Assembly: GCF_963676685.1 (NCBI RefSeq)
Contig: NC_092344.1
Coordinates: 107,632,001-107,696,000 of the forward strand
Direction: 5' to 3'
From: Mytilus edulis
Lineage: Eukaryota
DNA length: 64,000 nt
The position numbers were made by a program, and so were the translations under genes. Below the pieces are notes generated by a model. That model did no database searches, was not told the origin of the DNA, and was given only the letters and a program-made list of their open reading frames with translations. This document shows, piece after piece, positions 1 through 36,592 of the stretch (its first letter is position 1; every line of letters begins with the position of its first letter).

Positions 1-965
1 AACCAAGAAAATGCTTATTTGGGCCCTTTTTGGCCCCTAATTCCTAAAATGTTGGGACCAAAACTCCCAAAATCAATACCAACCTTCCTTTTGTGGTCAT
101 AAACCTTTAGTTAAAATTTCATAGATTTCCATTCACTTTTACTAAAGTTAGAGTGCGAAAACTAAAAGTATTCGGACGCCGGACGACGACGACGACGACG
201 ACGCCGACGACGACGACGACGACGCCGACGCCAACGTGATAGCAATATACGACGAAAATTTTTTCAAAATTTGCGGTCGTATAAAAACTTTAACCACAGA
301 GTGAATGTAATGTTTCCTCGCAGAAAAACTAAGTCCATTTATAAGTAAAATACGGAAAAAATGGAATTTTATTTTTACAAAATTTACTTCTGGATACTTT
401 CTTATGATCAGAAACAAGCTTTTGTCTAAGTTTGGTAGAAATCCAGGATAGTTTAAGAACATTATAAAAATTTTAAAAACTTAAACCACAGAGTGAATGT
501 TTTATTTCTGCAAAAAAACTAAGTCCATTTATAAGTAAAATACGGAAAAGTGGAAACTTATTTTTACAAAATTTTCTTCTTGATACTATCTTATGATCTT
601 AAACAAGCTTCTGTCCAAGTTTGGTACAAATCAAGGATAGTTTATGAAAGTAATTAAAATTTTAAAAACTTTAACCACAGAGTGAATGTAATGTTTCCTC
701 GCAGAAAAACTAAGTCCATTTATAAGTAAAATACGGAAAAAATGGAATTTTATTTTTACAAAATTTACTTCTGGATACTTTCTTATGATCATAAACAAGC
801 TTCTGTCCAAGTTTGGTAGAAATTCAGTATAGTTTAAGAAAGTTATTAAAATTTCAAAAACTTTAACCACAGAGTGAATATTTGTGGACGCCGCCGAACG
901 CCGACGACGACGGAATGTAGGATCGCTTAGTCTCGCTTTTTCGACTAAAGTCGAAGGCTCGACAA
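1..965 (-). mobile_element. Non-autonomous Helentron/HINE-like element with internal ~190-bp tandem repeats; a second HINE-like element (1-283) is nested in it
   Basis: On the minus strand it starts TTTTTGTCGAGCCTTCGACTTTAGTCGAAAAAGCGAGAC (subterminal inverted repeat) followed by a (GTC)n microsatellite. The unit AAAACTTTAACCACAGAGTGAAT recurs at ~285, ~477, ~666 and ~857. The second element ends at GGTCGTATAAAAA (~285) and has its own GACGAC microsatellite (181-232). Confidence 0.65.
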
Positions 966-6236: not shown

Positions 6237-6437
6237 AGCATTAATCTCTAACCAAACTGAAACGAAAGACATTCATCAATAAATGAAAATAATTCGATAA
6301 CATTTTGATACATATTTAATAATTTTTCAACAAAATTAATGAATAACTGTTATTTAATATTAAGAATATCAATTGATTCCGATATACATATCATGCAATA
6401 CACAGAACTCATAGACTATAATGAAACGTAAACAAGA

Positions 6438-6444
6438 TCACGTG
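6438..6444. promoter_or_regulatory. E-box TCACGTG ~200 bp upstream of the BSDC1 start codon
   Basis: GATCACGTGC at 6436-6445; CLEAR/USF-type motif; function inferred. Confidence 0.4.
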
Positions 6445-7200
6445 CTACATAAAAGTTTTTTAGCGGTAAATTCTAAACTAAAAAATAAAATAAAATTTTA
6501 ATGTTTTTTTCGATAGCAATAAAGAAATTTATGTATGAAATAACATCTAGTTGAAACATTATAGTAAGTAAATAAATAAGAAAAAAGGATTGATTTATTC
6601 CCCCCCCCCCCCCCCCCGAAAAAAAACCACTGACTAAATAAATCATACAAAAAACCAAGGATTTGTATAGTGAGACTATACAAATCCTTGAAAAAACGAA
6701 TTAACACTATAGCAGCAGAGACATATAATACAGAAATGTTCTAAGAAATGATTTAGTAGGAACAGAGACATATATGTCTCTGGTAGGAACAACATCCATT
6801 TTAAGCGAGTTCAACATCACGGTTTATTTGGAGTTTTACCATAGGAGTTTGAAATGAGGTCTGAAATAGCACAGAGGAGAAAATCGACAATTTTAGGACA
6901 CCTGTTATTGTTCACTAATTTTACGATGTTCTCCAAGGAATTGTAATTACTTGTGTTCTCTGAGGATATTCATTTTAAAACAGTATTTTAGAAACAAGAG
7001 ATAAATTACCCTTTTCAATTGAAGTATTTTTATATAAATTAAAACATGTCAAAATTTTATATAATCTTAAGCACCGTAAATTTACTACAATCTTGACTTT
7101 CGTAGAAGAGTAAGATAGGTGCAGTACTCCCCATTGAAGATTCAGTATTCCAATAAAGTGTTTTTTATTAATTAAAGAAAATAGTTTGATGATTTCTAAA

Positions 7201-7551
7201 TTCAGTGTCATCTGTCAGCTTGGTTTGATCTTATAATTACCACGAACTCATCACCCAAGCTTTCAATGATAACTATAGGCAATTTCTTGAGTATACTACT
7301 CAGGAATTTATTTATTGTTTTTAGTTGATTGTATTAATGAGGTCCTAGGTAGATGATTAGATCTTATTAAAACGTTTACACTCGTTACCTGTTATAAAAG
7401 AACATGATTGCTTGAGTTGAAAGATGATAACCTCTTAATCAATTATTAGTTGATTGCTAATGATCAGTTTTGATTGGTTTATAATCTCGATTATAATCCT
7501 GGTGTTGACAGATGATTAGAGTTCACTGCAAAGAGTATATATACTGGATTT
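7201..7551 (+). promoter_or_regulatory. Conserved proximal promoter of homeobox gene A (TATA-like element plus TGACAG/TGAT motifs)
   Basis: Blocks alignable with 13642-13974: TTCAGTG.CATCTGTCAGCTTGGTTTGATCTT, TTGAGTTGA.AGATGATAAC, TGTTGACA, GCAAAGAGTATATATA.TGGATTTT. Confidence 0.65.
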
Positions 7552-7622
7552 TTACTATTTTTCTTCATTCATATCTTTAGTCAGTCAGTAGTAACATTGT
7601 AGCAACCTCAGAATTAATCGAA

Positions 7623-8339
7623 ATGGCGTCCATACCTATGTCGTTCAGTATTGAAGAGCTATCAAAAAGCAGCAGGGTTAAGCAGCCACTTAAGTCAGAG
7701 AGTGCATTCTACGACTTATACTATATACCATCAGTCAACCACCATTCGAACTACAACTTCTCTACAAGTTCAATGACAGTTGAACAGCATATACAGAAGA
7801 AAAGAAAAAGATCTCTCCTCGATTCAGAAGATCACATCAGTTCACCAGAATCTAGACATTCATCTTCTCCTAGTTCTAACTCTGATGATTCTGAGAACCA
7901 CGAACAACCCTCAAAGAAAACCAGAACCATCTTCACTAACTCTCAGGTCTTTGAACTAGAGCGATACTACAGCACCTGCAAATACCTTGCTATTGAAGAC
8001 CGACAAGTCCTTTCCAAGAGACTCAAAGTCAGCGAAGTACAGATAAAATGGTGGTTTCAGAATCGCAGAATGAAAGAGAAACGTCAGATCAAGAGCTTCG
8101 GCTACAACGACTCAACAGAATTATCAAAGTTTGTTAGTGTCGGAAGGCCTAATACAGATCTACAGTCTTCTATGAATCAACCATCACACCAACATGGACT
8201 TCACCAGAACTATTCAGCATTACCACCAATGTTTAACCCGTACATGTTTGGATATGGTTGTTTGTCACCAGTCATGAATCCTGTTCAACAGTACTACAAC
8301 GGACTTTCACCCCAGCCAGTGCAACAGTACAGATTATAA
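7623..8339 (+). CDS. Intronless divergent ANTP-class (NK-like) homeobox protein, paralog A (238 aa)
   Basis: Homeodomain 7911-8090 SKKTRTIFTNSQVFELERYYSTCKYLAIEDRQVLSKRLKVSEVQIKWWFQNRRMKEKRQI; N-terminal eh1/TN-like SFSIEEL; KKRKR basic motif; Tyr/Pro-rich C-terminus. Confidence 0.93.
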   Translation: MASIPMSFSIEELSKSSRVKQPLKSESAFYDLYYIPSVNHHSNYNFSTSSMTVEQHIQKKRKRSLLDSEDHISSPESRHSSSPSSNSDDSENHEQPSKKTRTIFTNSQVFELERYYSTCKYLAIEDRQVLSKRLKVSEVQIKWWFQNRRMKEKRQIKSFGYNDSTELSKFVSVGRPNTDLQSSMNQPSHQHGLHQNYSALPPMFNPYMFGYGCLSPVMNPVQQYYNGLSPQPVQQYRL

Positions 8340-10374
8340 CTTGTGCTAATAAACATTATTCAAGAACATTCCTACATATGTGCTTAAGTAAAATAATAGT
8401 TCTATTGTTGTCATAGTTTGTTTTGCAATTGTTATTGTTAAAGATTTGATATGTGTATATATGTGCTCATTAAAACATGTATTTATATTCGATTTCAAGA
8501 TTTTGTCTTTTTTGCCAAAATGTATGAACAAGGGGAAAAGTTACATTCTTGTTGTCTACCTTATTCGGTTTTGTTGTCGTATGCGTAATACCGTCGCTTT
8601 CATATAGTATAGATCAATTCTATTATTTGTCTTTGGGTCTAAATTGTTTTTCGTTTGAAATCATCCAAACAGATAAAACAATGGTCTCATCTATATATAT
8701 AGAACGAGAAACTAGAAACACTTATGAACCACCTCAACAAACGACACCCACTGAACACCAGGTTTCTGACATGGGATATCTATTTATTATGTATGTTTAT
8801 TGTTGTATTGTTTATCTAGGAAGAATTTGCAACTGCAACACGACGCAAATCGGGAACACCTAATCAAGACATCTTACTTAAACTTGTGCTCATGAACAAA
8901 TTAAAAAAACTGATCCAAAGGGAAAGATAATCTATTTAAAAAAAACCCAATACGATGTAAAAACAAAATTAAAAAAAAACTGAAACGAAAATACAAACAG
9001 CTATTCACAAATCACTACACATAAAACTGAAGCTGATCAACACGAATACCACGAAAAAACGGAGAGACCTTAGTTAATTGCCCTTTCCCCCGTGTCGCGA
9101 TCGGGAAGGTAGAGTATCTCCTACTACTGATTTCACAGGTTCTCGTTGCTCTAGTAAAGGAAATACCCATTCGCCAATGTGAAAATGATCAAATGAATAT
9201 ATGATGGCGAAATTAAAAAAAAATCACATTTTCATTGTGTAGTTAACATCTAGAATATATATTATATTCTCTATTTATATTCAATAGAATATGTAGATCG
9301 GTAATATATTCAATAGAATATTTAGATCGGTAAATGAACACGAATTTTTACTAAAATAAAAACTGGAAATGGACAGCATATATTTTTTTTAAAATCGATA
9401 ATTATACACGTTTGATCATTGTTTGTCTGTCATCAAAGGGATGAAGAAAACAAGTAATTATATTCAATAGAATAGTGTTTGCAGAATATGTAGATCAGTA
9501 AATGACCACGAATTTTAACTAGAATAATTCTGGAAATGGACAGCATGTCTTTCAAAGAGCCCTCATATGGACCCTCAAAGTTTTGTTTCAAAATGTTTTA
9601 TTCTCGGTACGCATTGCAAGACAATGCCTCATCATAAGAAAAATAAAGAATATTATCTTTGCCATTCACAATCAAAGTACTGAAGTACTGAACATCCGAT
9701 GACCGCAAGTTTTTGTGGATGGTTAAACTGGAATCTTCTTGTATTCGCTTCACTTAAACAACTGGTATGACCCTATGAACAAAGTGTAGTAGTCAGCCGA
9801 GAACCAGCTTAGTGGATGGTCACAAGCACTTGTATCAGAAAAAAAATATTTGAGACAAGTTCGAGCGGGGATGATGAATAAATGACAAGGAATTCAATGT
9901 TACCGTTATAACTATTATATTGTGATACAAGTATACTCTGGTTTATTGTCATGAGTATATTATATTAATGTTTAAAATGTTTGCATATAACAGCTACATG
10001 TATTATATATAAATTTCTTTCAATTGTAATAATTCCATAATTTCTAATAGATTGAAATTGAGCAGGCATTCCTATTTTCCCACAAAACGTTGAAACATAT
10101 TGCCGCAATTTGTGATATGTATACATACTATTTTTAATTGATATCTATTCTAAAAATATTTAAAGCACCAAAAATATTACAAACCTTCATTTTAAAATTC
10201 ACCTTAACTAATTTTATTTTTGAATCATATACTAATATATTGTAAATATAAAGATATCCCCTTTTTGAAGTAAATATTTAAAATTGCTCAACGGATAAGT
10301 GGAGTCCTCCGAATATAAACGGAGATACATACCTGAACAAAACAGAACAGATATTCTTCCGCGTGCGTTAATAC

Positions 10375-12035
10375 CAGTGGCGTAGATGGGTCATTTTACG
10401 TGTACACCCCAACTTTACGGCGAGGGATATGATATGAATGAGATCCCATAATGATTCCTGTCGGTAAAAATCATTGATAGCAACATACTTTTGAATCTAA
10501 ATGGTTTATTTGTTTTGGTTAAATTTTGTAATATGTTAACTTGTTCATCGTGTTAAACTGGGAGCTAGCTTAATGGTCATTAGTTTTAGAGAAAACGTCC
10601 AAACCAATATTACTTTTAAATAAGTTTAAAGGTGTCGTGAGTGACCATACAATCGACAAAAGCACCTTTTAATGAACACAAACAAAATATTTCAGGGCTA
10701 AGATGTGCAATATAAAAAAAATCTGGAACACCTAGGATTTCTTCCCACAAAAAGTGAATCAATTTATCATTCCTTTAAAAAAAAAATGATATTTTTTTTT
10801 TATCTGGAATATTTCACGACAATGTATGAAGGTTTAAATTGAGCATGTTAAACAATTAATTGCGTAAAGAAGAGCGGCTATCTTTCTATCAAAAAAGAAC
10901 AGAAAAATGAACGAAAACAAATACTTTCAAAATTTTAGCTTTAGCCGTGACATTAGTCATAGAAAAAGCTTATTCGGCATTTTCATCAAATTCGACCAAG
11001 GTTCGACAAGTAGTTAATGTAATTGAGAAATAACAAAATGTAAGCCCAAACTGCGACCACTTATTAATTGCAGAAAGAAATACATTTTGTCCTTAAAACG
11101 CGGGAAAATTAAAGATATAATTGCATCATTATATTACTCTGAATACCCTTTTGATCATTAACAGTTTCTGTCCAACTTTCGTAAAATTTCACGGAGAGTC
11201 ATTCAAAAGACTTTATCCACATTCGGAACCTAAATATTGACGCCGCTTTGTCTCGCTTTTGGGACATAAATCACAGGCTCGCCAAAAATACAAACAGCAT
11301 ATCGAATCTGAGCAGATAGTGAATTGCTTTAAATATAAAAAAAAGTACGTAGAATTCATAGTAGATTAAGACTTTTACAAAAGATTCGAACAAATATATT
11401 AAATGATCTATTTGAGTAAAGGAGTTGGTTCAGTAAGACCCTTTTTTGGCCCCAAAATATAGCAGTTTTACAAAATTTTTAAAATGTAAACCTTTAGTTA
11501 TTTATTGGACAATAGAATGCTTCTGCTACATAAATATGGGCTGTTTTTGACAATACAATGCACATATATCCGCTACTAGCACCATTTAGTCATGCTAAAT
11601 TACTGAAATCCTCATAATTCTAGCATTTTAGTTAAATTTTAATTTTTACCAAAAACCATCTGAAAAGTGACATTTTTCGGCATATTAGGTAGATTTTTCA
11701 TATTTGAGCTTGAATCGGATCGTTTTTAATGCCTAAATCTGTTAAAATCTTTCACTTAAACTAATTAATTCAAATAAAATAGACACTTAAGTGTTTAAAA
11801 AGTGGTCAAAATCTTTCGTCAGATGAACCTGAAATTTGAGGCCAAAATCGGTCCTTACCGGACCTACTCCTTTAATTTAGTCCCTTTTTATTCAAAATTA
11901 CAATCCATTGAAAAAAGAAGCACAAGGCTGATGTGCTTTTGACCTGTTTTCCTTATTCTATGTCGATTATTTGTTTTATTTTCAAAATTCAAGTGTACGC
12001 CCGGGTGTTTTGACGTAAACGTAGCTACGCACATG
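10375..12035. mobile_element. Non-autonomous DNA transposon with 5-bp TSD (hAT5-like), containing nested insertions
   Basis: Ends CAGTGGCGTAG / CTACGCACATG; AATAC flanks both sides (10370-10374, 12036-12040). Confidence 0.6.
11420..11871. mobile_element. MITE with TTAA-type target (Kolobok-like); second copy at 18820-19271
   Basis: TIRs AGGAGTTGGTTCAGTAAGACC / GGTCCTTACCGGACCTACTCCT, flanked by GTAA and TTAA. Confidence 0.7.
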
Positions 12036-13641
12036 AATACAATTTTTCTGTACATGTGTTTAGATGCCATTAATAACTATTTACTTATATATAGATTAGA
12101 AATATATAACGACAAAACATTTTCATATAATTAATTTATGTTCTAAACAAAAATATTGTTATGAGTATTCCTTGAAGAAATGAATTTATAACAAGCGATA
12201 TTTTGGACTCGAAAATGTCCGCGTATAAATATCGATAACAGTCAAACACGAAAGCTACGTAAGTAGAAATCTCGTCGGCAACAATACTGTAACAATGGAA
12301 TGTCCTCACGGTCATCAAGATGTAGAAATTACATTATACCGAAATTCGATGATATACAAGTTTAAAAACAACTCTCGGTCCTGTGACTTTATAGATTTGC
12401 GAAATGTATTGGTGGTTTTTATTTAACCGATTAACTCTTAGGCCTTCCTCGTGTGAATGTCGGTGGAAGTGTATATCGGTTGGTTCCCAATGGAATGCCA
12501 TGTTACTGTTGAAAATTACATCTATTAAACGTAAACCAAAATCAAGCATCAAAAAAGTTTTCCAGCTCGAACCTTTTGTTCGATTCACTTTAAATTTGTT
12601 ACAATGTTTACATTGTCCGTTTCTAAAATATACACATTATTGGTTTTTTTTCGGAAAATATAGATAATTATTATAGTTTTAAGTTGATTGAAGAATATTC
12701 GCTAAAAGGATAGAGAATTCAAATGTTTTGAAACACTCTCGATACTTTGGAATACACGTTATATAATTTATGTATCTTTATCTGCTCTTTTTGTTGCCTT
12801 GTTGCCTAAAAGTAGCTACCCCTCTGGGGCCTACAAACCATTAAACGAAAATTGAAAGGATGTGATGGTTAATTGGTGGGGGGAAACAGGATTTCAAATA
12901 TGTCTTAATTCTCCTCGTAAGATAAATGCTTGTTTGTATCTGTGTGAAAATTATTTAAATTGTGTTTTCCTTCCAGTAAGTAATTTACAAAGTCTAATAA
13001 AAAATGAATATTAACGCCCCAATAAAAACGGAAATTTATAGATCAACACTAAATCACCAAATTCATGAAAAATTTATGCATTTGATATTTGACGATTAAA
13101 ACAAATCGGTTACCGTTGACTTTATGTGTTTTCTATTCAAATATGCCTCTCTTTAAAAAAAAAGTATTTCCGAAAATAATTTGAAGAGACAACTGAATTT
13201 TAATCGATTTTCAGTTTTTATCAACGATCAGAAGTTACATATACAGCAAAACATGTGACATAGTCAAATTACTATACCCTGACCTTTGAAATTAACTATC
13301 TAACTACAACATCAATTTTTTTAGCGTTTTGGGAATAGTCAGTATAAGACGATTGTCTAAAAACTCTATACACGTGCATTCTATTTTATAACCGATTTAA
13401 AAAAAAAAAAAGTACTTCAGAAATGAAAGAGGTATATGATTTTTTTCTTCTCGATTGTTTTAGTTACATTAGTTGTTGAAATAGTTGATTACACTCTATA
13501 GAAAACAAAAACAAACAATAAACGAATAATAAGGTAAATACATAAGTATTAAAAGCTTACCAGAGTGTAAGTCAGAACAGAATTTTTTATCAATTTTATC
13601 TTAAAGAGCTAATATGGAAATTGAAAAAGAAAACGATTTAA

Positions 13642-13974
13642 TTCAGTGGCATCTGTCAGCTTGGTTTGATCTTGATTGCCTACTCGTAATCCAAGCTTCT
13701 ACATTTACAATTTCTTTAGTACCAATCAATATTTACTTACTTTTTGTATTGCTATGTAATCTACTTATCTATTACCTGACTTAATTGTAAATAATATATT
13801 TTAACTCGTATCTGTCATAATGAAAATGCGCTTTGAGTTGACAGATGATAACCCGTTATCAAATTTTGGTTGTTGATTGCTAATAATTATTTTTGATTGA
13901 ATACTTAACAAGATGATAATCAAGATGTTGACATGTGATCAGAATTCTATGCAAAGAGTATATATAGTGGATTT
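13642..13974 (+). promoter_or_regulatory. Conserved proximal promoter of homeobox gene B1 (copy for B2 at 21042-21374)
   Basis: Aligns with 7201-7551; TATA-like GAGTATATATAG ~95 bp upstream of the ATG. Confidence 0.65.
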
Positions 13975-14055
13975 TCACCAAAAAAAAATAGTCATTATAA
14001 ATTTGAAGTAAAAAAGAAGCAAAGTAAAATTATTGAAATCACAGAATACATCTAA

Positions 14056-14781
14056 ATGGCGTTCATACCAGAGTCGTTCAGTATAGAAGAACTATCTAAA
14101 AGCAGCCAGGCTCAACAGTCACTTAAGTCAAAGACTGCATTGTACGAATTTTACATGACACTGAAAGGCCTCCAACCTCAAAACAACGATTTTTCTACTA
14201 GTTCAACGGCAAATGACCTGCCCATACAGAGAAAAAGAAAAAGATCTACTACCGACGATTCAGAGGATAACATAACTTCACCAGAATCTAAACATTGCTC
14301 TTCTTCAAGTTTTACCTCGGATGATTATGAAAACAACAATCAACCCACAAAGAAAGCAAGAACCATCTACACCAACTCCCAGGTTTTTGAATTAGAGCGA
14401 TACTATATCACACACAAGTACCTTGCTATTGAAGACAGACCCGTGCTTGCCAAGAAACTCAAACTCAGTCAAGTACAGATAAAATGGTGGTTTCAGAATC
14501 GCAGAATGAAAGAGAAACGTCAGATCAAGAGCTTCGGCTACAACGACTTAACAGAATTATCAAAGTTTGTTAGTGTTGGAAGGCCTATTCCAGATCTACA
14601 GTCTTCTATGAGTCAACCATCCCAACTACATGGATTTCACCAAAACTATTCAGCATTACCATCAATGTTTAACCCGTACATGTATGAATATGGTTCTTTA
14701 TCACCAGTCATGAATCCTGGTTATGTTCACCAGTACTACAACGGACTCTCACCAAAACCAGTGCAACAGTACAGATTATAA
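14056..14781 (+). CDS. Intronless divergent ANTP-class (NK-like) homeobox protein, paralog B1 (241 aa)
   Basis: Homeodomain 14347-14526 TKKARTIYTNSQVFELERYYITHKYLAIEDRPVLAKKLKLSQVQIKWWFQNRRMKEKRQI; SFSIEEL motif. Confidence 0.93.
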   Translation: MAFIPESFSIEELSKSSQAQQSLKSKTALYEFYMTLKGLQPQNNDFSTSSTANDLPIQRKRKRSTTDDSEDNITSPESKHCSSSSFTSDDYENNNQPTKKARTIYTNSQVFELERYYITHKYLAIEDRPVLAKKLKLSQVQIKWWFQNRRMKEKRQIKSFGYNDLTELSKFVSVGRPIPDLQSSMSQPSQLHGFHQNYSALPSMFNPYMYEYGSLSPVMNPGYVHQYYNGLSPKPVQQYRL

Positions 14782-15944
14782 CTTGTTGATAAACATTTAT
14801 CCTGAACATTTCTACGTATGTGCTTAAGTAACATAATAGTTCTATAGGTTGTTATTCAATTGTTATTTATTGTTGAAGATTTAATATGTGTATATTTGTG
14901 CTAATTAAAACATTCATTATTTGATTTTGAGATTTTATTTTATTTACCAAAATATATTAACAAAGGGGATGAGACACACACCGTCAGTTGAGTGTATCTC
15001 CAAGTCAGTCAAGAACTAGTAATTGATATCCAGTGATAATTGTTGCATGGTGATGCCTGGCTGTTTATCGTGTTTGTTTTTATTCGTCATTGTAGGAATC
15101 AGGCCGTGGGTTACCTTTTGAATTGGGTGACCTTTTAACTTAAAGCTTATGATTTTACGGTTTGAGTATTGCTATTCATTCTATGTAAGTAGTAATTCAC
15201 AGTTAGGAGTTTGGTTTTTCATTTTGGCCCCTGTGGATTTTTCAAATATAAATGTTATTGTGCAATAAAATTCATCTTTAGACAGTTGAGTACAAATTTA
15301 GCCTTCAAAGATGGTTTATAAGAAAATCAAGAATAATTTTTACATGTGTTTTATGGGCTATTTTTCTCAGTTCGAATCTGTATTTTCATAGCTAGACCGG
15401 TCTAAGGTCCAGAAAGATGACGCAATTTGACAAAAAAAAATTGAAATGAAAGACATGATTTTTATTGAATTTCTTAATATGTAAGCAGTTCCAGAAAAGG
15501 TATTACTTCAAGCGTTTGAAATTCTACTCCTGACCAAATTTTGGGGAAGTATGTGACAACCCCCCCTTTTTTTTGCATAATTTTATAACAAATAAATGCA
15601 GATTGTTGCAATAAAGATGTAAAAAAGAAATGATATTTTAACAGTTGTGTATAAAATTTATGGGAGATTCTGACACATGTATATGCACATATAGTGACCG
15701 TGACAAGCAGAAAGCTTAATTTGCAAGAAAGAAATGAAAAGGAAATGGTAAAGTTTATGAGGGCAGATTTTAATATGTTTACCTTTCTTATTGATACCAT
15801 AAGATATCACATCTTTAATAATTTACCGATTCAGTGGAGTGAAAGGACACGTCCTTATAGAACTACCAGAGCTTTGATAATTTATGGTCATAACATTTTG
15901 TAACTCCGGTCAGAATCAGGCAACTCGAGTTTTCTCCCTTTTAA

Positions 15945-15952
15945 TCACATGA
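15945..15952. promoter_or_regulatory. M-box/CLEAR-like motif TCACATGA upstream of ATP6V0B exon 1 (copy at 23345-23352)
   Basis: Reverse complement is TCATGTGA, 65 bp upstream of the ATG. MiT/TFE factors are established regulators of V-ATPase genes. Confidence 0.5.
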
Positions 15953-16016
15953 GCCGTTTCCGTCAATATTATCATATGAGGAAAAACGTCAATATCTGAA
16001 AGAATAATTCCAAAAT

Positions 16017-16113
16017 ATGGAGGCGAAACCGTCAAGTAAACAGACAGGGATGTCCCTGTTCCCTGTTTACGCTATTACACTGTTATTGGGGATAACTGCT
16101 ATCATCATTATAG
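16017..16113 (+). CDS. ATP6V0B: Duplicated (upstream) copy of ATP6V0B coding exon 1
   Basis: caaaatATGG...ATTATAG|gtacaa encodes [32 protein letters not shown], phase 1, identical to 23417-23513. Confidence 0.7.
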
Positions 16114-16399
16114 GTACAAATTGTAAATTATATGACCAACATTTGCAACCCCAAACTATAGTCACTGGCACTTGTTTCTAGACTGTCGAATACCAGTATC
16201 AATGAATGTATAAAATGCAAAAGGTCAACAAGTGGCTGTGACTCGAACTATGTGACAGGCCCATCATAGGTTAATAATTTACAATTGTATTAATGTACAA
16301 TGTAGATACCTAGATAGAAATTTATGCCACATCAGATTTACTTTTAGTTTACATCCCCTTGTTGTCTAGATACTTTGTCTGTGTCACATCCATTACCTT

Positions 16400-18267
16400 C
16401 CTGACAATACATCTGACAAAACTAACATCCTAAATAGTCAGTTTCAAAAAGCATTTTCCGAAGAAACAACAAGTGAACCTATTCCGGATAAAGGGAAATC
16501 AAACTATCCAAAAATGAATAAGATCACCATCTCCAAGAAGGGTGTAATAAAATTACTGGACAAGATAAATCCTAACAAAGCAACTGGTCCAGATCAAATT
16601 TGCGGAACAGTACTTAAAGAACTTAGTAGTGACATTTCAACTGCAATCACCTACATCTTCCAAAAATCACTTGACACAGGAAAAATCCCAAAAGATTGGA
16701 AACATGCAAACGTCTGTCCTGTTTTTAAAAAAGGTGATAAACACAACGCAATAAACTATAGACCCATATCTCTCACATGCATACTTTGTAAGATCATGGA
16801 ACACATCATAGCCAGTAGTATGATGGACCACTTAGAAAATAACAAAATCTTGTACGACCTTCAACACGGATTTCGAGCATCTAGATCATGTGAAACCCAA
16901 CTAGTATCATTCATCCAACAACTAGCAAAAAATAACAACAGTAACATCCAAACTGACATAGTTGTGATGGACTTTGCCAAAGCCTTTGACAAAGTTCCTC
17001 ACAAGAGACTTCTCTACAAACTGAAACATTATGGCATTGATCACAACACTCTAAAATGGATAGAAGATTTTCTCACATCCCGTACACAAACGGTCATTAT
17101 TGATGGTGTTCAGTCGGACAAAATTAACGTAACATCTGGTGTTCCCCAAGGTACAGTCTTGGGTCCGATCCTGTTCCTTGTATATATTAATGACTTCAAT
17201 GAATACATGAAACACAGTACCCTCAGATTATTTGCAGATGATAGTATAATTTATAAAACAATTCGAAACAAAGAAGACACACAAAAACTGCAAGAAGACC
17301 TCACATCAGCAGCAAAATGGGAGAAGGACTGGCTCATGTCATTCCATCCAGACAAGTGTTCAGTCCTTCAGATAACAACCAAGAAAAACCCAATAAAATT
17401 TGACTATACTCTCCACCAACATGTATTACAAAAAGAAACATCCACAAAATATTTGGGAATAACTATACAAACTGACCTAAAATGGAACAAACATGTAAAC
17501 AATATTACAGCTGCAGCCACACAAAAGCTGAACTTTATCAAAAGAAATTTAAAAGTTAATTCTAAAACAGTCAAAGAAAAAGCATACATTGCACTAGTAA
17601 AACCAAAGCTAGAATACAGCAGCTGCGTCTGGGACCCACATACCAACTCACAAACACATCAACTTGAGATGGTCCAGCGCAGAGCAGCAAGGTACACTTG
17701 CAACAGATACCATAACACAAGCTCAGTCACTGAAATGCTGCAAACATTAAATTGGGCAACACTTGAGAAAAGGCGAATTAGAACCCACATCATTTTCTTC
17801 TACAAAATTATACATCATCTTGTAGCCATATACCCGACAGACCTACTTACACAATCCGATACAAGAACACGTCAACATTCACATATTTATTCTTTCAGAC
17901 CAATACAAACCACTAAAGACTCATACAAGTACTCATTCTACCCCAGAACAATCTTACAATGGAACCTTCTCCCAGTAGCTGCAGTTCAATGTACTACTCT
18001 TGAAAGCTTCCGAGAACAAATTCCAATTTCTGTTCTCAATAAACATCTAAAAATTTAAATAAATCCTACAATGTATATAGTTTTAACCAAAATGTATAGT
18101 ACAAAAACAGAAGAAAAAGAAATTACGTTGAATTTTTATTTTTATTTTTTTGTATATTATTCACTGTAAATAAAAATTAGATCCCACGCAAGCGCGGCAT
18201 AGTAAAATCAGTGCCCGGCACGTTATCATCAGTATGTTGATGGAGTGCTGAATTATAAAGAAGAAGA
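16400..18267 (+). mobile_element. 5'-truncated CR1-like LINE with an uninterrupted RT ORF (16514-18058)
   Basis: Motifs [43 protein letters not shown] and SFYPRTI..WN. The frame is open upstream to ~16400 ([14 protein letters not shown]); no endonuclease domain; 3' AAGAAGAAGA tail. Confidence 0.93.
16514..18058 (+). CDS. LINE reverse transcriptase (514 aa, N-terminally truncated ORF2)
   Basis: Complete set of non-LTR RT motifs with catalytic FADD. Confidence 0.9.
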   Translation: MNKITISKKGVIKLLDKINPNKATGPDQICGTVLKELSSDISTAITYIFQKSLDTGKIPKDWKHANVCPVFKKGDKHNAINYRPISLTCILCKIMEHIIASSMMDHLENNKILYDLQHGFRASRSCETQLVSFIQQLAKNNNSNIQTDIVVMDFAKAFDKVPHKRLLYKLKHYGIDHNTLKWIEDFLTSRTQTVIIDGVQSDKINVTSGVPQGTVLGPILFLVYINDFNEYMKHSTLRLFADDSIIYKTIRNKEDTQKLQEDLTSAAKWEKDWLMSFHPDKCSVLQITTKKNPIKFDYTLHQHVLQKETSTKYLGITIQTDLKWNKHVNNITAAATQKLNFIKRNLKVNSKTVKEKAYIALVKPKLEYSSCVWDPHTNSQTHQLEMVQRRAARYTCNRYHNTSSVTEMLQTLNWATLEKRRIRTHIIFFYKIIHHLVAIYPTDLLTQSDTRTRQHSHIYSFRPIQTTKDSYKYSFYPRTILQWNLLPVAAVQCTTLESFREQIPISVLNKHLKI

Positions 18268-21200
18268 CTCAGTTGACACACAAGTACATGTTTGTGTTGA
18301 TGACCGTTTACTGTAACTGTGTTGTCAAATAGATTTTGTGCACTTTCTTCTTCTCTTCTTCCCATTATGAGTCGAACTCGGTTATTTTGCTGTGTATTTC
18401 ATATGCGGCTGAGTCTATGGGGAATCCGGGTCCGTTCGCGCCCATTCACATTCACACCCACTCATGTTCGCCCCCTTTCACGTTCGCACCCTACATCTTC
18501 GCGCCAAATTAAAGATATAATTGCATCATTATATTACTCTGAATACCCTTTTGATCATTAACAGTTTCTGTCCAACTTTCGTAAAATTTCACGGAGAGTC
18601 ATTCAAAAGACTTTATCCACATTCGGAACCTAAATATTGACGCCGCTTTGTCTCGCTTTTGGGACATAAATCACAGGCTCGCCAAAAATACAAACAGCAT
18701 ATCGAATCTGAGCAGATAGTGAATTGCTTTAAATATAAAAAAAAGTACGTAGAATTCATAGTAGATTAAGACTTTTACAAAAGATTCGAACAAATATATT
18801 AAATGATCTATTTGAGTAAAGGAGTTGGTTCAGTAAGACCCTTTTTTGGCCCCAAAATATAGCAGTTTTACAAAATTTTTAAAATGTAAACCTTTAGTTA
18901 TTTATTGGACAATAGAATGCTTCTGCTACATAAATATGGGCTGTTTTTGACAATACAATGCACATATATCCGCTACTAGCACCATTTAGTCATGCTAAAT
19001 TACTGAAATCCTCATAATTCTAGCATTTTAGTTAAATTTTAATTTTTACCAAAAACCATCTGAAAAGTGACATTTTTCGGCATATTAGGTAGATTTTTCA
19101 TATTTGAGCTTGAATCGGATCGTTTTTAATGCCTAAATCTGTTAAAATCTTTCACTTAAACTAATTAATTCAAATAAAATAGACACTTAAGTGTTTAAAA
19201 AGTGGTCAAAATCTTTCGTCAGATGAACCTGAAATTTGAGGCCAAAATCGGTCCTTACCGGACCTACTCCTTTAATTTAGTCCCTTTTTATTCAAAATTA
19301 CAATCCATTGAAAAAAGAAGCACAAGGCTGATGTGCTTTTGACCTGTTTTCCTTATTCTATGTCGATTATTTGTTTTATTTTCAAAATTCAAGTGTACGC
19401 CCGGGTGTTTTGACGTAAACGTAGCTACGCACATGAATACAATTTTTCTGTACATGTGTTTAGATGCCATTAATAACTATTTACTTATATATAGATTAGA
19501 AATATATAACGACAAAACATTTTCATATAATTAATTTATGTTCTAAACAAAAATATTGTTATGAGTATTCCTTGAAGAAATGAATTTATAACAAGCGATA
19601 TTTTGGACTCGAAAATGTCCGCGTATAAATATCGATAACAGTCAAACACGAAAGCTACGTAAGTAGAAATCTCGTCGGCAACAATACTGTAACAATGGAA
19701 TGTCCTCACGGTCATCAAGATGTAGAAATTACATTATACCGAAATTCGATGATATACAAGTTTAAAAACAACTCTCGGTCCTGTGACTTTATAGATTTGC
19801 GAAATGTATTGGTGGTTTTTATTTAACCGATTAACTCTTAGGCCTTCCTCGTGTGAATGTCGGTGGAAGTGTATATCGGTTGGTTCCCAATGGAATGCCA
19901 TGTTACTGTTGAAAATTACATCTATTAAACGTAAACCAAAATCAAGCATCAAAAAAGTTTTCCAGCTCGAACCTTTTGTTCGATTCACTTTAAATTTGTT
20001 ACAATGTTTACATTGTCCGTTTCTAAAATATACACATTATTGGTTTTTTTTCGGAAAATATAGATAATTATTATAGTTTTAAGTTGATTGAAGAATATTC
20101 GCTAAAAGGATAGAGAATTCAAATGTTTTGAAACACTCTCGATACTTTGGAATACACGTTATATAATTTATGTATCTTTATCTGCTCTTTTTGTTGCCTT
20201 GTTGCCTAAAAGTAGCTACCCCTCTGGGGCCTACAAACCATTAAACGAAAATTGAAAGGATGTGATGGTTAATTGGTGGGGGGAAACAGGATTTCAAATA
20301 TGTCTTAATTCTCCTCGTAAGATAAATGCTTGTTTGTATCTGTGTGAAAATTATTTAAATTGTGTTTTCCTTCCAGTAAGTAATTTACAAAATCTAATAA
20401 AAAATGAATATTAACGCCCCAATAAAAACGGAAATTTATAGATCAACACTAAATCACCAAATTCATGAAAAATTTATGCATTTGATATTTGACGATTAAA
20501 ACAAATCGGTTACCGTTGACTTTATGTGTTTTCTATTCAAATATGCCTCTCTTTAAAAAAAAAGTATTTCCGAAAATAATTTGAAGAGACAACTGAATTT
20601 TAATCGATTTTCAGTTTTTATCAACGATCAGAAGTTACATATACAGCAAAACATGTGACATAGTCAAATTACTATACCCTGACCTTTGAAATTAACTATC
20701 TAACTACAACATCAATTTTTTTAGCGTTTTGGGAATAGTCAGTATAAGACGATTGTCTAAAAACTCTATACACGTGCATTCTATTTTATAACCGATTTAA
20801 AAAAAAAAAAAGTACTTCAGAAATGAAAGAGGTATATGATTTTTTTCTTCTCGATTGTTTTAGTTACATTAGTTGTTGAAATAGTTGATTACACTCTATA
20901 GAAAACAAAAACAAACAATAAACGAATAATAAGGTAAATACATAAGTATTAAAAGCTTACCAGAGTGTAAGTCAGAACAGAATTTTTTATCAATTTTATC
21001 TTAAAGAGCTAATATGGAAATTGAAAAAGAAAACGATTTAATTCAGTGGCATCTGTCAGCTTGGTTTGATCTTGATTGCCTACTCGTAATCCAAGCTTCT
21101 ACATTTACAATTTCTTTAGTACCAATCAATATTTACTTACTTTTTGTATTGCTATGTAATCTACTTATCTATTACCTGACTTAATTGTAAATAATATATT

Positions 21201-21455
21201 TTAACTCGTATCTGTCATAATGAAAATGCGCTTTGAGTTGACAGATGATAACCCGTTATCAAATTTTGGTTGTTGATTGCTAATAATTATTTTTGATTGA
21301 ATACTTAACAAGATGATAATCAAGATGTTGACATGTGATCAGAATTCTATGCAAAGAGTATATATAGTGGATTTTCACCAAAAAAAAATAGTCATTATAA
21401 ATTTGAAGTAAAAAAGAAGCAAAGTAAAATTATTGAAATCACAGAATACATCTAA

Positions 21456-22181
21456 ATGGCGTTCATACCAGAGTCGTTCAGTATAGAAGAACTATCTAAA
21501 AGCAGCCAGGCTCAACAGTCACTTAAGTCAAAGACTGCATTGTACGAATTTTACATGACACTGAAAGGCCTCCAACCTCAAAACAACGATTTTTCTACTA
21601 GTTCAACGGCAAATGACCTGCCCATACAGAGAAAAAGAAAAAGATCTACTACCGACGATTCAGAGGATAACATAACTTCACCAGAATCTAAACATTGCTC
21701 TTCTTCAAGTTTTACCTCGGATGATTATGAAAACAACAATCAACCCACAAAGAAAGCAAGAACCATCTACACCAACTCCCAGGTTTTTGAATTAGAGCGA
21801 TACTATATCACACACAAGTACCTTGCTATTGAAGACAGACCCGTGCTTGCCAAGAAACTCAAACTCAGTCAAGTACAGATAAAATGGTGGTTTCAGAATC
21901 GCAGAATGAAAGAGAAACGTCAGATCAAGAGCTTCGGCTACAACGACTTAACAGAATTATCAAAGTTTGTTAGTGTTGGAAGGCCTATTCCAGATCTACA
22001 GTCTTCTATGAGTCAACCATCCCAACTACATGGATTTCACCAAAACTATTCAGCATTACCATCAATGTTTAACCCGTACATGTATGAATATGGTTCTTTA
22101 TCACCAGTCATGAATCCTGGTTATGTTCACCAGTACTACAACGGACTCTCACCAAAACCAGTGCAACAGTACAGATTATAA
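21456..22181 (+). CDS. Intronless homeobox protein, paralog B2 (identical protein to B1)
   Basis: Same 241-aa translation, offset 7400. Confidence 0.92.
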   Translation: MAFIPESFSIEELSKSSQAQQSLKSKTALYEFYMTLKGLQPQNNDFSTSSTANDLPIQRKRKRSTTDDSEDNITSPESKHCSSSSFTSDDYENNNQPTKKARTIYTNSQVFELERYYITHKYLAIEDRPVLAKKLKLSQVQIKWWFQNRRMKEKRQIKSFGYNDLTELSKFVSVGRPIPDLQSSMSQPSQLHGFHQNYSALPSMFNPYMYEYGSLSPVMNPGYVHQYYNGLSPKPVQQYRL

Positions 22182-23416
22182 CTTGTTGATAAACATTTAT
22201 CCTGAACATTTCTACGTATGTGCTTAAGTAACATAATAGTTCTATAGGTTGTTATTCAATTGTTATTTATTGTTGAAGATTTAATATGTGTATATTTGTG
22301 CTAATTAAAACATTCATTATTTGATTTTGAGATTTTATTTTATTTACCAAAATATATTAACAAAGGGGATGAGACACACACCGTCAGTTGAGTGTATCTC
22401 CAAGTCAGTCAAGAACTAGTAATTGATATCCAGTGATAATTGTTGCATGGTGATGCCTGGCTGTTTATCGTGTTTGTTTTTATTCGTCATTGTAGGAATC
22501 AGGCCGTGGGTTACCTTTTGAATTGGGTGACCTTTTAACTTAAAGCTTATGATTTTACGGTTTGAGTATTGCTATTCATTCTATGTAAGTAGTAATTCAC
22601 AGTTAGGAGTTTGGTTTTTCATTTTGGCCCCTGTGGATTTTTCAAATATAAATGTTATTGTGCAATAAAATTCATCTTTAGACAGTTGAGTACAAATTTA
22701 GCCTTCAAAGATGGTTTATAAGAAAATCAAGAATAATTTTTACATGTGTTTTATGGGCTATTTTTCTCAGTTCGAATCTGTATTTTCATAGCTAGACCGG
22801 TCTAAGGTCCAGAAAGATGACGCAATTTGACAAAAAAAAATTGAAATGAAAGACATGATTTTTATTGAATTTCTTAATATGTAAGCAGTTCCAGAAAAGG
22901 TATTACTTCAAGCGTTTGAAATTCTACTCCTGACCAAATTTTGGGGAAGTATGTGACAACCCCCCCTTTTTTTTGCATAATTTTATAACAAATAAATGCA
23001 GATTGTTGCAATAAAGATGTAAAAAAGAAATGATATTTTAACAGTTGTGTATAAAATTTATGGGAGATTCTGACACATGTATATGCACATATAGTGACCG
23101 TGACAAGCAGAAAGCTTAATTTGCAAGAAAGAAATGAAAAGGAAATGGTAAAGTTTATGAGGGCAGATTTTAATATGTTTACCTTTCTTATTGATACCAT
23201 AAGATATCACATCTTTAATAATTTACCGATTCAGTGGAGTGAAAGGACACGTCCTTATAGAACTACCAGAGCTTTGATAATTTATGGTCATAACATTTTG
23301 TAACTCCGGTCAGAATCAGGCAACTCGAGTTTTCTCCCTTTTAATCACATGAGCCGTTTCCGTCAATATTATCATATGAGGAAAAACGTCAATATCTGAA
23401 AGAATAATTCCAAAAT

Positions 23417-36312: not shown

Positions 36313-36592
36313 TTTTTATGCCCCACCTACGATAGTAGAGGGGCATTATGTTTTCTGGTCTGTGCGTCCGTTCGTTCGTCCGTCTGTCCCGCTCCAGGTT
36401 AAAGTTTTTGGTCAAGGTAGTTTTTGATGAAGTTGAAGTCCAATCGACTTCAAACTTAGTACACATGTTCCCTATGATATGATCTTTCTAATTTTAATGC
36501 CAAATTAGAGTTTTTACCCCAATTTCACGGTCCACTGAACATGGAAAATGATAGTGTGAGTGGGGCATTCGTGTACTGAGGACACATTCTTG
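36313..36592 (+). mobile_element. HINE-like element copy
   Basis: Same termini as 30811-31280, single core. Confidence 0.75.

What the first reader, a model, noticed from the sequence alone, without database searches (positions are those of the whole stretch)
7623..22181. Tandem cluster of intronless orphan homeobox genes with Trp at homeodomain position 47
Seen: three same-strand single-exon genes with QIKWWFQNRRMKEKR. Known: position 47 contacts the DNA major groove and is usually Ile/Val/Thr/Asn; position 20 is usually Phe (here Tyr). Helix 1 (QVFELER), the N-terminal eh1/TN-like FSIEEL and the Tyr-rich tail look NK-like, whereas Met54 is Hox-like. Inference: a lineage-specific homeobox family, probably Groucho-recruiting, with altered DNA specificity and still expanding. 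Compact intronless structure would suit rapid early-embryo expression.
Basis: partly seen in the sequence, partly recalled or inferred. Interest (0 to 1): 0.8.

Follow-up and report, generated by a model that had tools for sequence, protein, structure and literature searches.

The report
Mussel-specific Trp47 homeobox retrogene family
Three intronless homeobox genes here belong to an 11-gene, mussel-only family whose DNA-reading helix carries an unusual tryptophan, and which arose from an intron-containing molluscan NK-like gene that was already described in oyster.

Summary
Three + strand ORFs (238, 241 and 241 aa) encode homeodomains reading QIKWWFQNRRMKEKR, with Trp at position 47. Copies 2 and 3 are base-identical, because they lie in a 7,400-bp tandem duplication with one mismatch.

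The genes are not orphans. They nest within the molluscan "ANTP_NKL Clade I" family (oyster Cgi_NKL, Paps et al. 2015). They share its KEKR signature, Tyr20, Met54, the N-terminal FSIE(N/E)L motif and the C-terminal motifs. All 56 non-Trp relatives sampled have Thr47.

Trp47 marks a single clade of 49 proteins inside a mussel-only expansion. This genome, probably Mytilus edulis, holds exactly 11 Trp47 genes: 3 here and 8 on contig C7.

The canonical family gene on contig C4 has three coding exons, with an intron at homeodomain position 44/45. All 14 expansion members are single-exon and lie on other chromosomes, so the founder was probably a retrocopy.

Copy 1 versus copy 2 gives dN/dS 0.48 overall and 0.20 in the homeodomain, so the genes are constrained.

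Expression evidence is weak. Low-depth colinear contigs cover only the ORF in two runs that are probably RNA, and two confirmed RNA runs show nothing.

Altered DNA specificity and Groucho recruitment remain inferences. I rate this a new variant of a known kind, of moderate interest.

The parts
7623..8339 (+). Copy 1: single-exon homeobox gene, 238 aa, Trp47 type
   Evidence: ORF. Pfam Homeodomain E 1.5e-19. Identical to public protein model P0124. The M. trossulus orthologue P0002 is 89% identical. AlphaFold2 gives a three-helix homeodomain at residues 101-158 with pLDDT about 95; the rest is disordered.
7641..7661 (+). N-terminal eh1-like motif SFSIEEL of copy 1 (residues 7-13)
   Evidence: F8 and L13 are invariant, and S7 and I10 nearly invariant, across 21 family members including Thr47 relatives and a scallop. 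FSIENL or FSIESL occurs in most other molluscan members.
7911..8090 (+). Homeodomain of copy 1 (positions 1-60). The Trp47 codon TGG is at 8049-8051. Tyr20, Gln50, Asn51, Met54 and KEKR at 55-58 are present.
7200..7622 (+). Putative promoter and 5' UTR of copy 1. About 420 nt are conserved with copy 2, including a TATA box (TATATATA, 7536-7543).
   Evidence: Alignment of 7200-7640 with 13630-14075 and the sequence itself. Run contigs begin at 7591 and 7599. The promoter role is inferred.
8340..8560 (+). Conserved 3' flank of copy 1 (about 220 nt shared with copy 2), with AATAAA at 8348-8353 directly after the stop codon
   Evidence: Run contigs end at 8336 and 8347. Use as a poly(A) signal is inferred.
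14056..14781 (+). Copy 2: single-exon homeobox gene, 241 aa, Trp47 type. Homeodomain at 14347-14526, Trp47 codon at 14485-14487.
   Evidence: It is 73% identical to copy 1 and 97% identical to M. edulis P0005.
21456..22181 (+). Copy 3: base-identical duplicate of copy 2. Homeodomain at 21747-21926, Trp47 codon at 21885-21887.
   Evidence: It lies in the second unit of the tandem duplication.
11106..25905 (.). Two units of a 7,400-bp direct tandem duplication (11106-18505 and 18506-25905). There is one mismatch, and a 5-bp AAATT microhomology at the junction and the right flank. Each unit carries a homeobox copy and a reverse-transcriptase fragment.
   Evidence: Offset-7400 self-comparison, junction sequences, and RVT_1 ORFs at 16514-18058 and 23914-25458.

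Best explanation
These are functional, protein-coding transcription-factor genes. They form the chromosome-1 branch of a mussel (Mytilidae)-specific subfamily of the molluscan NK-like homeobox family that Paps et al. 2015 called ANTP_NKL Clade I (oyster Cgi_NKL).

Shown:
- The canonical family gene in this genome (contig C4, 81.06 Mb) has three coding exons, with an intron between homeodomain positions 44 and 45.
- A mussel-only expansion of 14 single-exon genes lies on other chromosomes (C8, C7, C1).
- Inside that expansion one clade replaced the ancestral Thr47 with Trp47. It numbers 11 genes here: 8 on C7 and 3 in this window.
- Copies 1 and 2 evolve under purifying selection, strongest in the homeodomain.
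- Copy 3 comes from a 7.4-kb tandem duplication with a single mismatch.

Inferred:
- The founder of the expansion was a retrocopy of the spliced mRNA, which then multiplied by tandem and segmental duplication.
- The proteins bind DNA through a standard three-helix homeodomain. Trp47, together with Met54, contacts base 4 of the TAAT-type core and so probably shifts site preference relative to the Thr47 parent.
- The conserved N-terminal FSIEEL (eh1-like) motif may recruit a Groucho-type co-repressor.
- Expression is low or stage-restricted. It would come from a compact TATA promoter as an unspliced mRNA of about 0.8 kb.
For: Family identity:
- The word-index search and the profile search return only bivalve, gastropod and chiton proteins with the same architecture.
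- The Cgi_NKL homeodomain printed in Paps et al. supplementary file 6 ends ...QQVKTWFQNRRMKEKR, like the Thr47 relatives.
- The paper names KEKR as the clade's signature. K151, K153 and R154 are invariant and E152 nearly so.

Phylogeny (107 rows, 276 columns):
- The mussel expansion is 75 rows, SH-aLRT 99.
- The Trp47 clade is 49 rows, SH-aLRT 89, and needs one T/W change.
- The window genes sit in a 7-row clade (100), sister to a 33-row C7 clade (98).
- The homeodomain-only tree keeps the family apart from this genome's other NKL homeodomains.

Residue counts: 49 of 49 have Trp and 56 of 56 have Thr. The codons are TGG versus ACA or ACT.

Genome census: exactly 11 Trp47 homeoboxes, against 0 for the reversed control pattern.

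Introns: the canonical gene matches in three pieces with splice acceptors, and the break falls at ..DQQ|VKTW... All expansion members match in one piece. Five are identical to M. edulis RefSeq models.

Selection (NG86): copy 1 versus copy 2 gives dN 0.148, dS 0.307, ratio 0.48; homeodomain 0.20; non-homeodomain 0.63. C7 paralogue pairs give 0.29-0.37.

Fold: homeodomain pLDDT about 95, with Trp143 (position 47) in helix 3.

Role of positions 47 and 54: direct base-specific contacts to base 4 are stated in Chu et al. 2012, PMC3460184.

Transcript: in two runs from different studies and organism labels, contigs cover 7591-8336 and 7599-8347 at depth about 5. The unique flanks read zero and there are no joints. 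The conserved TATA box and AATAAA bracket that span.
Against: - No run that holds the gene is on record as RNA.
- The two confirmed RNA-seq runs, sampled at 6% and 18%, gave zero reads on the gene. Expression is therefore not demonstrated, and CDS-limited coverage could also come from capture data.
- The Trp47 clade has only SH-aLRT 89 from a quick search.
- The species behind the basal unnamed Trp47 proteins could not be identified, so 'Mytilidae-wide' is an inference.
- Non-homeodomain dN/dS is 0.63. Copy 1 also differs from its M. trossulus orthologue at 26 of 238 residues. Both indicate fast, possibly relaxed, evolution.
- No retrocopy hallmarks (poly(A) tract, target-site duplications) can be expected or were seen at this age. 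Retroposition rests on intron absence and relocation only.
- DNA specificity and Groucho binding are untested. The eh1-like motif lacks the usual hydrophobic residue at its 7th position.
Confidence: 0.72

Rival explanations
1. Copy 3, and so the idea that the cluster is 'still expanding', is an assembly artefact. Under this reading the 7.4-kb unit exists once and was laid down twice by the assembler, leaving two genes rather than three.
For: The two units differ at 1 of 7,405 positions. False tandem duplications are known from long-read assemblies (own knowledge).
Against: The junction is clean and has 5-bp microhomology (AAATT), as expected of a real replication- or repair-based duplication. 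Mussel haplotypes are highly divergent; for example, copy 2 versus M. edulis P0005 shows 8 amino-acid differences. Two haplotypes mistaken for a duplicate would therefore be expected to differ at many more than one site. That last step is an inference.
Confidence: 0.2
2. The genes are decaying or neutrally drifting retrocopies with no function of their own. Their open frames would persist only because they are young.
For: They are intronless and lie among transposon fragments (RVT_1 ORF). Non-homeodomain dN/dS is 0.63. Confirmed RNA runs gave no reads. One C7 member (9.755 Mb) lacks the N-terminal motif and sits on a long branch.
Against: - At least 10 of the 11 Trp47 genes have intact ORFs with the same architecture, even though synonymous divergence between the C1 and C7 branches is saturated (dS above 1.3).
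- Homeodomain dN/dS is 0.08-0.31.
- The single-codon residue Trp47 is kept in 49 of 49 proteins.
- The promoter block and TATA box are conserved between copies 1 and 2 at dS 0.31.
- Orthologues are retained in four Mytilus species.
Confidence: 0.06
3. The whole family, including NKL Clade I, is the protostome orthologue of the deuterostome Vent/Ventx family rather than a lophotrochozoan novelty. The Trp47 genes would then be divergent Vent genes.
For: - The best non-mollusc named hit of the family profile is Saccoglossus Vent1 (E 2.7e-27). NCBI pipelines name many members 'vent1-like' or 'vex1-like'.
- Thr47 is described as a rare signature shared by the Vent and Bar families (PMC8911082). Met54 is shared too.
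- A fish vent1-like protein starts MVKNFSVDWLAQSY, which resembles FSIENLAKSS.
Against: In the homeodomain tree the Vent1 sequences, BarH-like 2 and the family form an unresolved polytomy. Saccoglossus Vent1 lacks a clear N-terminal motif. Paps et al. 2015 and Barton-Owen et al. 2018 could not place Cgi_NKL in any canonical family.
Confidence: 0.3
4. The genes are ordinary members of the families that the automatic annotations name: NKX3-1, HOX_3 (Hox-B3a-like), GBX, BARHL, zampogna-like.
For: Source names. PDB homeodomains of GBX1, BARHL2, NKX3-1 and NKX2-5 score E 1e-12 to 1e-14.
Against: The names contradict one another for near-identical paralogues. All the PDB hits score about equally, with none standing out. 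In the tree, this genome's own Gbx-like, En-like, Nk2-like and Hmx-like homeodomains fall outside the family.
Confidence: 0.02

Closest known systems
ANTP_NKL Clade I (oyster Cgi_NKL, CGI_10028802; Paps, Xu, Zhang & Holland 2015, PMC5322547)
   Same: The homeodomain ends in KEKR, with Tyr20, Met54 and KYL(P/Q/A) at positions 24-27. The N-terminal FSIE(N/E)L-AKSS motif is shared, as are the post-homeodomain (V)D(V)SQ(L/F)xxxG(x)P motif and the acidic, serine-rich linker. The window genes group with oyster, pearl-oyster, scallop, unionid, gastropod and chiton members.
   Different: Position 47 is Trp instead of the family's invariant Thr, and positions 19 (Tyr), 45 (Ile) and 60 (Ile) also changed. 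There are no introns, whereas the canonical Mytilus gene has two. There are 11 copies per genome against one Cgi_NKL listed for oyster. The proteins are shorter, about 240 aa against 270-350.
Vent/Ventx and Bar(H) homeobox families (NKL subclass)
   Same: NKL-type homeodomain, Met54, and in the parental lineage the rare Thr47 (PMC8911082). The N-terminal FS(I/V)xxLA(K/Q)S motif resembles that of a fish vent1-like protein. Vent proteins act as repressors in early embryos (PMC8911082).
   Different: Orthology is unresolved. Trp47 is not reported for either family. The KEKR ending is specific to the molluscan clade.
Lineage-specific, fast-evolving homeobox expansions: spiralian SPILE/TALE clades, eutherian ETCHbox (LEUTX, ARGFX and others), lepidopteran Shx
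   Same: They are taxon-restricted tandem or segmental expansions of a divergent duplicate of an older homeobox gene. Sequence evolves rapidly outside the homeodomain. In the known cases expression is in early embryos (PMC5322547, PMC4904359, PMC8524836; titles and abstracts).
   Different: The class is different (ANTP/NKL). The origin was probably retroposition. The defining change is at a base-contacting residue (47) rather than at position 50. The stage of expression is unknown here.

Membership tests
Homeodomain superfamily (Pfam PF00046) | Full-length match above the gathering score; three-helix fold with W48, F49, N51 and R53 | tested here: met
   70 and 65.4 bits against a cut-off of 22.9, profile positions 1-57 of 57. 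AlphaFold2 gives helices 106-118, 124-134 and 138-158 with pLDDT about 95.
ANTP_NKL Clade I (Paps et al. 2015) | KEKR at the C-terminal end of the homeodomain (positions 55-58) | tested here: met
   The paper states this motif. K151, K153 and R154 are invariant and E152 is at least 90% conserved in A1. All three window genes read MKEKR.
ANTP_NKL Clade I (Paps et al. 2015) | Groups phylogenetically with Cgi_NKL-type proteins of other molluscs, to the exclusion of canonical NKL families | tested here: met
   In the full-length tree the mussel expansion sits among molluscan members relative to deuterostome Vent outgroups. In the homeodomain tree the family forms one group (SH-aLRT 92, with one unnamed group nested inside), separate from this genome's other NKL homeodomains. 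Cgi_NKL itself could not be included as a row, because its sequence was seen only in the paper's supplement. Saccostrea and Ostrea orthologues stood in for it.
ANTP_NKL Clade I (Paps et al. 2015) | Thr at homeodomain position 47 (QQVKTWFQNRRMKEKR), as in every non-mussel member seen | tested here: not met
   The three window genes and 49 of 49 clade members have Trp. All 56 of 56 other members have Thr. This is a derived state within the clade, not grounds for exclusion.
Vent/Ventx family | Orthology to deuterostome Vent genes (a tree clade, Thr47, Met54) | tested here: inconclusive
   Saccoglossus Vent1 is the best non-mollusc hit, but the homeodomain tree leaves Vent, Bar and this family as a polytomy. 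Synteny was not testable.
Canonical families named by annotators (Nk3, Hox3, Gbx, BarH) | Nesting within that family in a homeodomain tree | tested here: not met
   No family stands out, and this genome's own Gbx-like, En-like, Nk2-like and Hmx-like homeodomains lie outside.
eh1 / Groucho-binding motif proteins | F-x-I-x-x-I/L-L heptapeptide near the N-terminus that binds the Groucho/TLE WD domain | tested here: inconclusive
   In SFSIEEL(S/A), the F, I and L positions are conserved, but the 7th position is Ser or Ala rather than a hydrophobic residue. Binding cannot be tested with these tools.
Retrogene (processed retrocopy) origin | Loss of all parental introns together with relocation away from the parent locus | tested here: met
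   The parent on C4 has three coding exons, with a phase-0 intron at homeodomain position 44/45. All 14 expansion members, on C8, C7 and C1, are uninterrupted.
Retrogene (processed retrocopy) origin | Poly(A) remnant and target-site duplications flanking the copy | not tested
   Not expected to survive at this divergence (dS saturated). Homology between the flanks of copies 1 and 2 simply ends about 430 nt upstream and 225 nt downstream.

The most novel reading that the evidence does not exclude
Trp47 is a genuinely new homeodomain recognition residue. Fixed about the time the mussel family arose, it would give an 11-gene retrogene-derived subfamily a DNA-site preference that no other animal homeodomain has. 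The subfamily would be deployed in a narrow developmental window, such as cleavage or early larva, as a mussel-specific layer of repression, in parallel to SPILE genes in spiralians and ETCHbox genes in mammals.
Probability: 0.3. Interest if true: 0.72.

Novelty: new variant of a known kind. Interest (0 to 1): 0.55.

Why it matters
Homeodomain DNA specificity is set by very few residues (47, 50, 54), and natural diversity at position 47 is narrow. Here a bulky aromatic residue at 47 was fixed and then kept in at least 49 genes across several mussel species. That makes the clade a natural experiment on how recognition evolves, and it is directly testable by comparing W47T or T47W swaps in binding assays.

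The case also documents a retrocopy that founded a sizeable family of developmental transcription factors. In addition, it supplies a mussel-specific expansion of a clade (NKL Clade I) so far known from single genes with no assigned function. Finally, it corrects inconsistent public annotations (NKX3-1, HOX_3, GBX, BARHL, zampogna-like) for these genes.

Tried and rejected
I could not fetch orthologous DNA from other Mytilus species or identify the hosts of the unnamed Trp47 proteins. dN/dS therefore rests on paralogues within this genome.
- Two scans of metagenome contigs found nothing: the Trp47 DNA pattern and protein P0029.
- The protein-atlas search could not take P0029.
- The listing of cluster members gave no organism names for the unnamed proteins.
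- The literature has no occurrence of WWFQNRR and no paper with both Mytilus and zampogna. I found no paper describing a Mytilus NKL expansion.
- I did not run the search of protein representatives. The operators called it costly, and its top 150 hits would be the same family, so it could not answer whether Trp47 exists in unrelated homeodomains.
- I rejected the reading that the Tyr20 plus Met54 combination marks a chimeric or novel class. Both residues are ancestral in NKL Clade I.
- I rejected a transposon-borne gene. Homology between the flanks of copies 1 and 2 is limited to promoter and 3' flank, without terminal repeats.

Full report
**1. Observation**

The ORF listing finds three + strand ORFs at 7623-8339 (238 aa), 14056-14781 (241 aa) and 21456-22181 (241 aa). 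Each matches the full Pfam Homeodomain profile (E 1.5e-19 and 4.1e-18).

A degenerate DNA pattern for K-W-W-F-Q-N-R-R matches three times in the window and never in 100 shuffles. Counting back from the invariant W48-F49-Q50-N51 puts Trp at position 47 and Tyr at position 20. The described sequence features are therefore real.

One correction is needed. Copies 2 and 3 are identical at every nucleotide. They sit at the same offset in two units of a 7,400-bp direct tandem duplication, 11106-18505 and 18506-25905. The units differ by a single G/A at 12992 versus 20392. The unit start, AAATT, recurs as the first five bases of the right flank. Each unit also carries a reverse-transcriptase fragment (RVT_1). 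The window has no N runs.

**2. Whose genome, and how many such genes**

Relatives found by the word-index search are almost all from Mytilus species. Five proteins of the window's own genome are identical to M. edulis RefSeq proteins. Copy 1 is identical to a public model, P0124, on a 126-Mb contig. The genome is therefore probably M. edulis, though this is an inference.

A six-frame search of the whole assembly with copy 1 finds 14 full-length, uninterrupted relatives:
- 11 with Trp47: three here on C1, and eight on C7 at 9.39, 9.40, 9.51, 9.75, 11.0, 18.96, 18.97 and 24.5 Mb.
- Three with Thr47: C7 at 52.01 and 52.02 Mb, and C8 at 44.99 Mb.

An exact DNA pattern for WWFQNRRMK gives the same 11 sites, against none for the reversed control. 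One C7 member (9.755 Mb) has an aberrant 453-aa frame without the N-terminal motif and sits on a long branch. It may be decaying.

**3. What family this is**

The 21-sequence alignment A1 shows a conserved architecture:
- an N-terminal (M)SFSIEEL-(A/S)KSS motif;
- a KRKR motif;
- an acidic, serine-rich linker;
- the homeodomain;
- a post-homeodomain LSQFVGVGKP motif;
- a C-terminal YNGLSP...R motif.

A profile search with A1 extends the family to scallops, oysters, pearl oyster, unionids, Mercenaria, Mya, Solemya, limpet, abalone, Gigantopelta and a chiton. Every one of those proteins has Thr47 and a homeodomain ending QQVKTWFQNRRMKEKR. Most have an N-terminal FSIENL or FSIESL.

The supplement of Paps et al. 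2015 (PMC5322547) prints the homeodomain of oyster Cgi_NKL (CGI_10028802), the sole oyster member of their lophotrochozoan-specific 'ANTP_NKL Clade I'. It has the same ending, and Tyr20. The paper names KEKR at the homeodomain C-terminus as the clade's signature. Barton-Owen et al. 2018 treat Cgi_NKL as a non-canonical NK gene.

So the window genes are not orphans. Tyr20, Met54, the N-terminal motif and the tail are all family traits.

Public names for the Mytilus members contradict each other (NKX3-1, HOX_3, GBX, BARHL, zampogna-like, vent1-like). PDB homeodomains of GBX1, Clawless, BARHL2, NKX3-1, NKX2-5 and TLX2 all score about equally (E 1e-12 to 1e-14). A homeodomain-only tree keeps the family together (SH-aLRT 92) and apart from this genome's other NKL homeodomains. 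Vent1 and BarH-like sequences fall in an unresolved polytomy next to it.

A Vent affinity is a live possibility:
- Saccoglossus Vent1 is the best named non-mollusc hit.
- Thr47 is a rare signature of the Vent and Bar families (PMC8911082).
- A fish vent1-like protein has a similar N-terminal motif.

This remains unproven.

**4. Where Trp47 arose**

I built a maximum-likelihood tree of 107 full-length proteins (276 columns, IQ-TREE quick search), rooted on Saccoglossus Vent1 and an amphioxus protein. It gives:
- a mussel-only expansion of 75 rows (SH-aLRT 99);
- within it, all 49 Trp47 proteins as one group (SH-aLRT 89), so the tree needs a single T/W change;
- the M. coruscus protein P0074 (Thr47) grouping with the oyster and pearl-oyster genes, which makes it the canonical orthologue.

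The window genes form a 7-row clade (100):
- copy 1 with P0001 and M. trossulus P0002 (99);
- copy 2 with M. edulis P0005 (100);
- two M. coruscus genes that share one contig.

Its sister is the 33-row C7 clade (98). Several unnamed Trp47 proteins from ENA, JGI and Logan branch below the Mytilus genes. They probably come from other mussel genera.

Trp47 co-occurs with Tyr19, Ile45, Asp30 and Ile60. The codons are TGG versus ACA or ACT, so three nucleotide changes are needed from the codons seen today. No intermediate residue was found among the 105 family members.

**5. Origin of the intronless state**

Searching the genome with P0074 finds the canonical gene at C4:81,060,382-81,062,303 in three pieces: aa 1-108, 104-164 and 163-272, at 90-93% identity. 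The second and third pieces are preceded by polypyrimidine-AG acceptors. The second intron falls between homeodomain positions 44 and 45 (...DQQ | VKTWFQ...).

All 14 members of the mussel expansion lack both introns and lie on other chromosomes. Loss of both introns together with relocation is most simply explained by reverse transcription of a spliced mRNA, followed by tandem and segmental duplication of the retrogene. This is an inference. No poly(A) remnant or target-site duplication can be expected at this age.

**6. Are the genes alive?**

Nei-Gojobori estimates on codon alignments of this genome's paralogues:
- Copy 1 versus copy 2: dN 0.148, dS 0.307, ratio 0.48. Homeodomain 0.20, remainder 0.63.
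- C7 pairs: 0.29-0.37 overall.
- C1 versus C7: saturated dS (above 1.3), with homeodomain ratios of 0.08-0.24.

Trp has a single codon, and it is retained in 49 of 49 proteins.

About 420 nt upstream of the ATG are conserved between copies 1 and 2. That block includes a TATA box (TATATATA, 7536-7543). About 220 nt downstream are also conserved. In copy 1 an AATAAA lies at 8348-8353, just after the stop codon.

AlphaFold2 with A1 gives a confident three-helix homeodomain (residues 101-158, pLDDT about 95) with Trp143 (position 47) in helix 3. The remainder is disordered.

Evolution outside the homeodomain is fast. Copy 1 differs from its M. trossulus orthologue at 26 of 238 residues.

**7. Expression**

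No run that holds the stretch is on record as RNA. Fourteen runs guessed to be RNA, from five studies, hold 14-39% of the sampled words of 7400-8800.

I laid four runs on 4800-10700:
- Two guessed-RNA runs, from different studies and organism labels, each gave two overlapping or adjacent contigs: 7591-7991 plus 7966-8336, and 7599-7975 plus 7979-8347. Depth was about 5, the contigs were colinear with the genome, and there were no joints. The unique flanks 6967-7557 and 8346-8542 read zero. These runs total only 49 and 91 Mb of contigs, so they are not whole-genome data.
- Coverage bracketed by the TATA box and the AATAAA fits an unspliced mRNA of about 0.8 kb. Capture data cannot be excluded.
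- Two confirmed RNA-seq runs, of which 6% and 18% were read, gave no reads on the gene, only on a high-copy repeat at 4800-5587.

Expression is therefore plausible, low or restricted, and not proven. Copies 2 and 3 were not tested, because the read laying cap was one call.

**8. Mechanism**

Established knowledge: residues 47 and 54 make direct base-specific contacts to base 4 of the TAAT-type core, and residue 50 contacts bases 5 and 6 (Chu et al. 2012, PMC3460184). The window proteins keep Gln50, Asn51 and Met54 and replace Thr47 with Trp. A change in preference at or next to base 4 is therefore likely but untested.

The N-terminal SFSIEEL keeps the F, I and L positions of an eh1 motif but has Ser or Ala at the seventh position. 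Groucho recruitment is a reasonable guess only.

**9. Novelty and verdict**

I found no paper containing WWFQNRR and none describing a Mytilus expansion of this clade.

The family itself (NKL Clade I) is known. Four things are new:
- the mussel-specific expansion;
- its probable retrogene origin;
- the fixed Trp at a base-contacting position;
- the correction of inconsistent annotations.

I rate it a new variant of a known kind, with interest 0.55.

Other first-stage notes cover the same stretch: the tandem duplication (s1-839915) and the ATP6V0B context (s1-839946). The scan has not reported this family on other DNA.

Noticed in passing
window 11106-25910: A 7,400-bp direct tandem duplication with one G/A mismatch (12992 versus 20392) and a 5-bp AAATT microhomology at the junction and the right flank. 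It may be real and very recent, or an assembly duplication.
   Followed up: partly
window 16514-18058 and 23914-25458: A 514-aa ORF with a reverse-transcriptase domain (RVT_1, E 3e-35), present once in each duplication unit. It is a non-LTR retroelement fragment downstream of homeobox copies 2 and 3.
   Followed up: partly
window about 29251-29433, 30010-30222, 32811-32963 (+): Exon-like ORFs that read as V-ATPase proteolipid (ATP6V0B / ATP-synt_C type) transmembrane helices. This is the next gene downstream. Another first-stage note claims that its first exon and promoter are duplicated with the 7.4-kb unit; I did not verify the first exon.
   Followed up: no
window 4800-5587: A very high-copy repeat: summed contig depth of about 10^4 in two runs, and about 30-130x on both strands in two confirmed RNA-seq runs, with many loose ends at 4835, 5190, 5237-5240 and 5508.
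   Followed up: no
G000:C4:81060382-81062303 (+) (loci L031, L032): The canonical NKL Clade I gene of this genome. It has three coding exons and an intron between homeodomain positions 44 and 45. It is 90-93% identical to M. coruscus P0074.
   Followed up: yes
G000:C7:9754616-9755005 (-) (locus L011): A Trp47 family member with an aberrant 453-477-aa open frame. It lacks the N-terminal FSIEEL motif and sits on a long branch (0.82). It may be a fusion or a decaying copy.
   Followed up: no
window 7400-7520 and 13830-13950: The upstream block conserved between copies 1 and 2 contains several TAAT/ATTA cores (for example GTTGATTGCTAAT and TTTTGATTG). These could be homeodomain (auto)regulatory sites, or chance in AT-rich DNA.
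   Followed up: no
window 282-883 and 36359-37116: Direct repeat families with periods of about 190 nt (three copies, 68-95% identical) and 530 nt (95% identical, plus a 70% copy at 30879).
   Followed up: no
proteins P0108-P0121: A tight group of unnamed homeodomain proteins ending QVKTWFQNRRMK(Y/F)KRQS nests among NKL Clade I sequences in the homeodomain tree. One of them is labelled Suberites domuncula HOXa1. Its identity and host are unknown.
   Followed up: no
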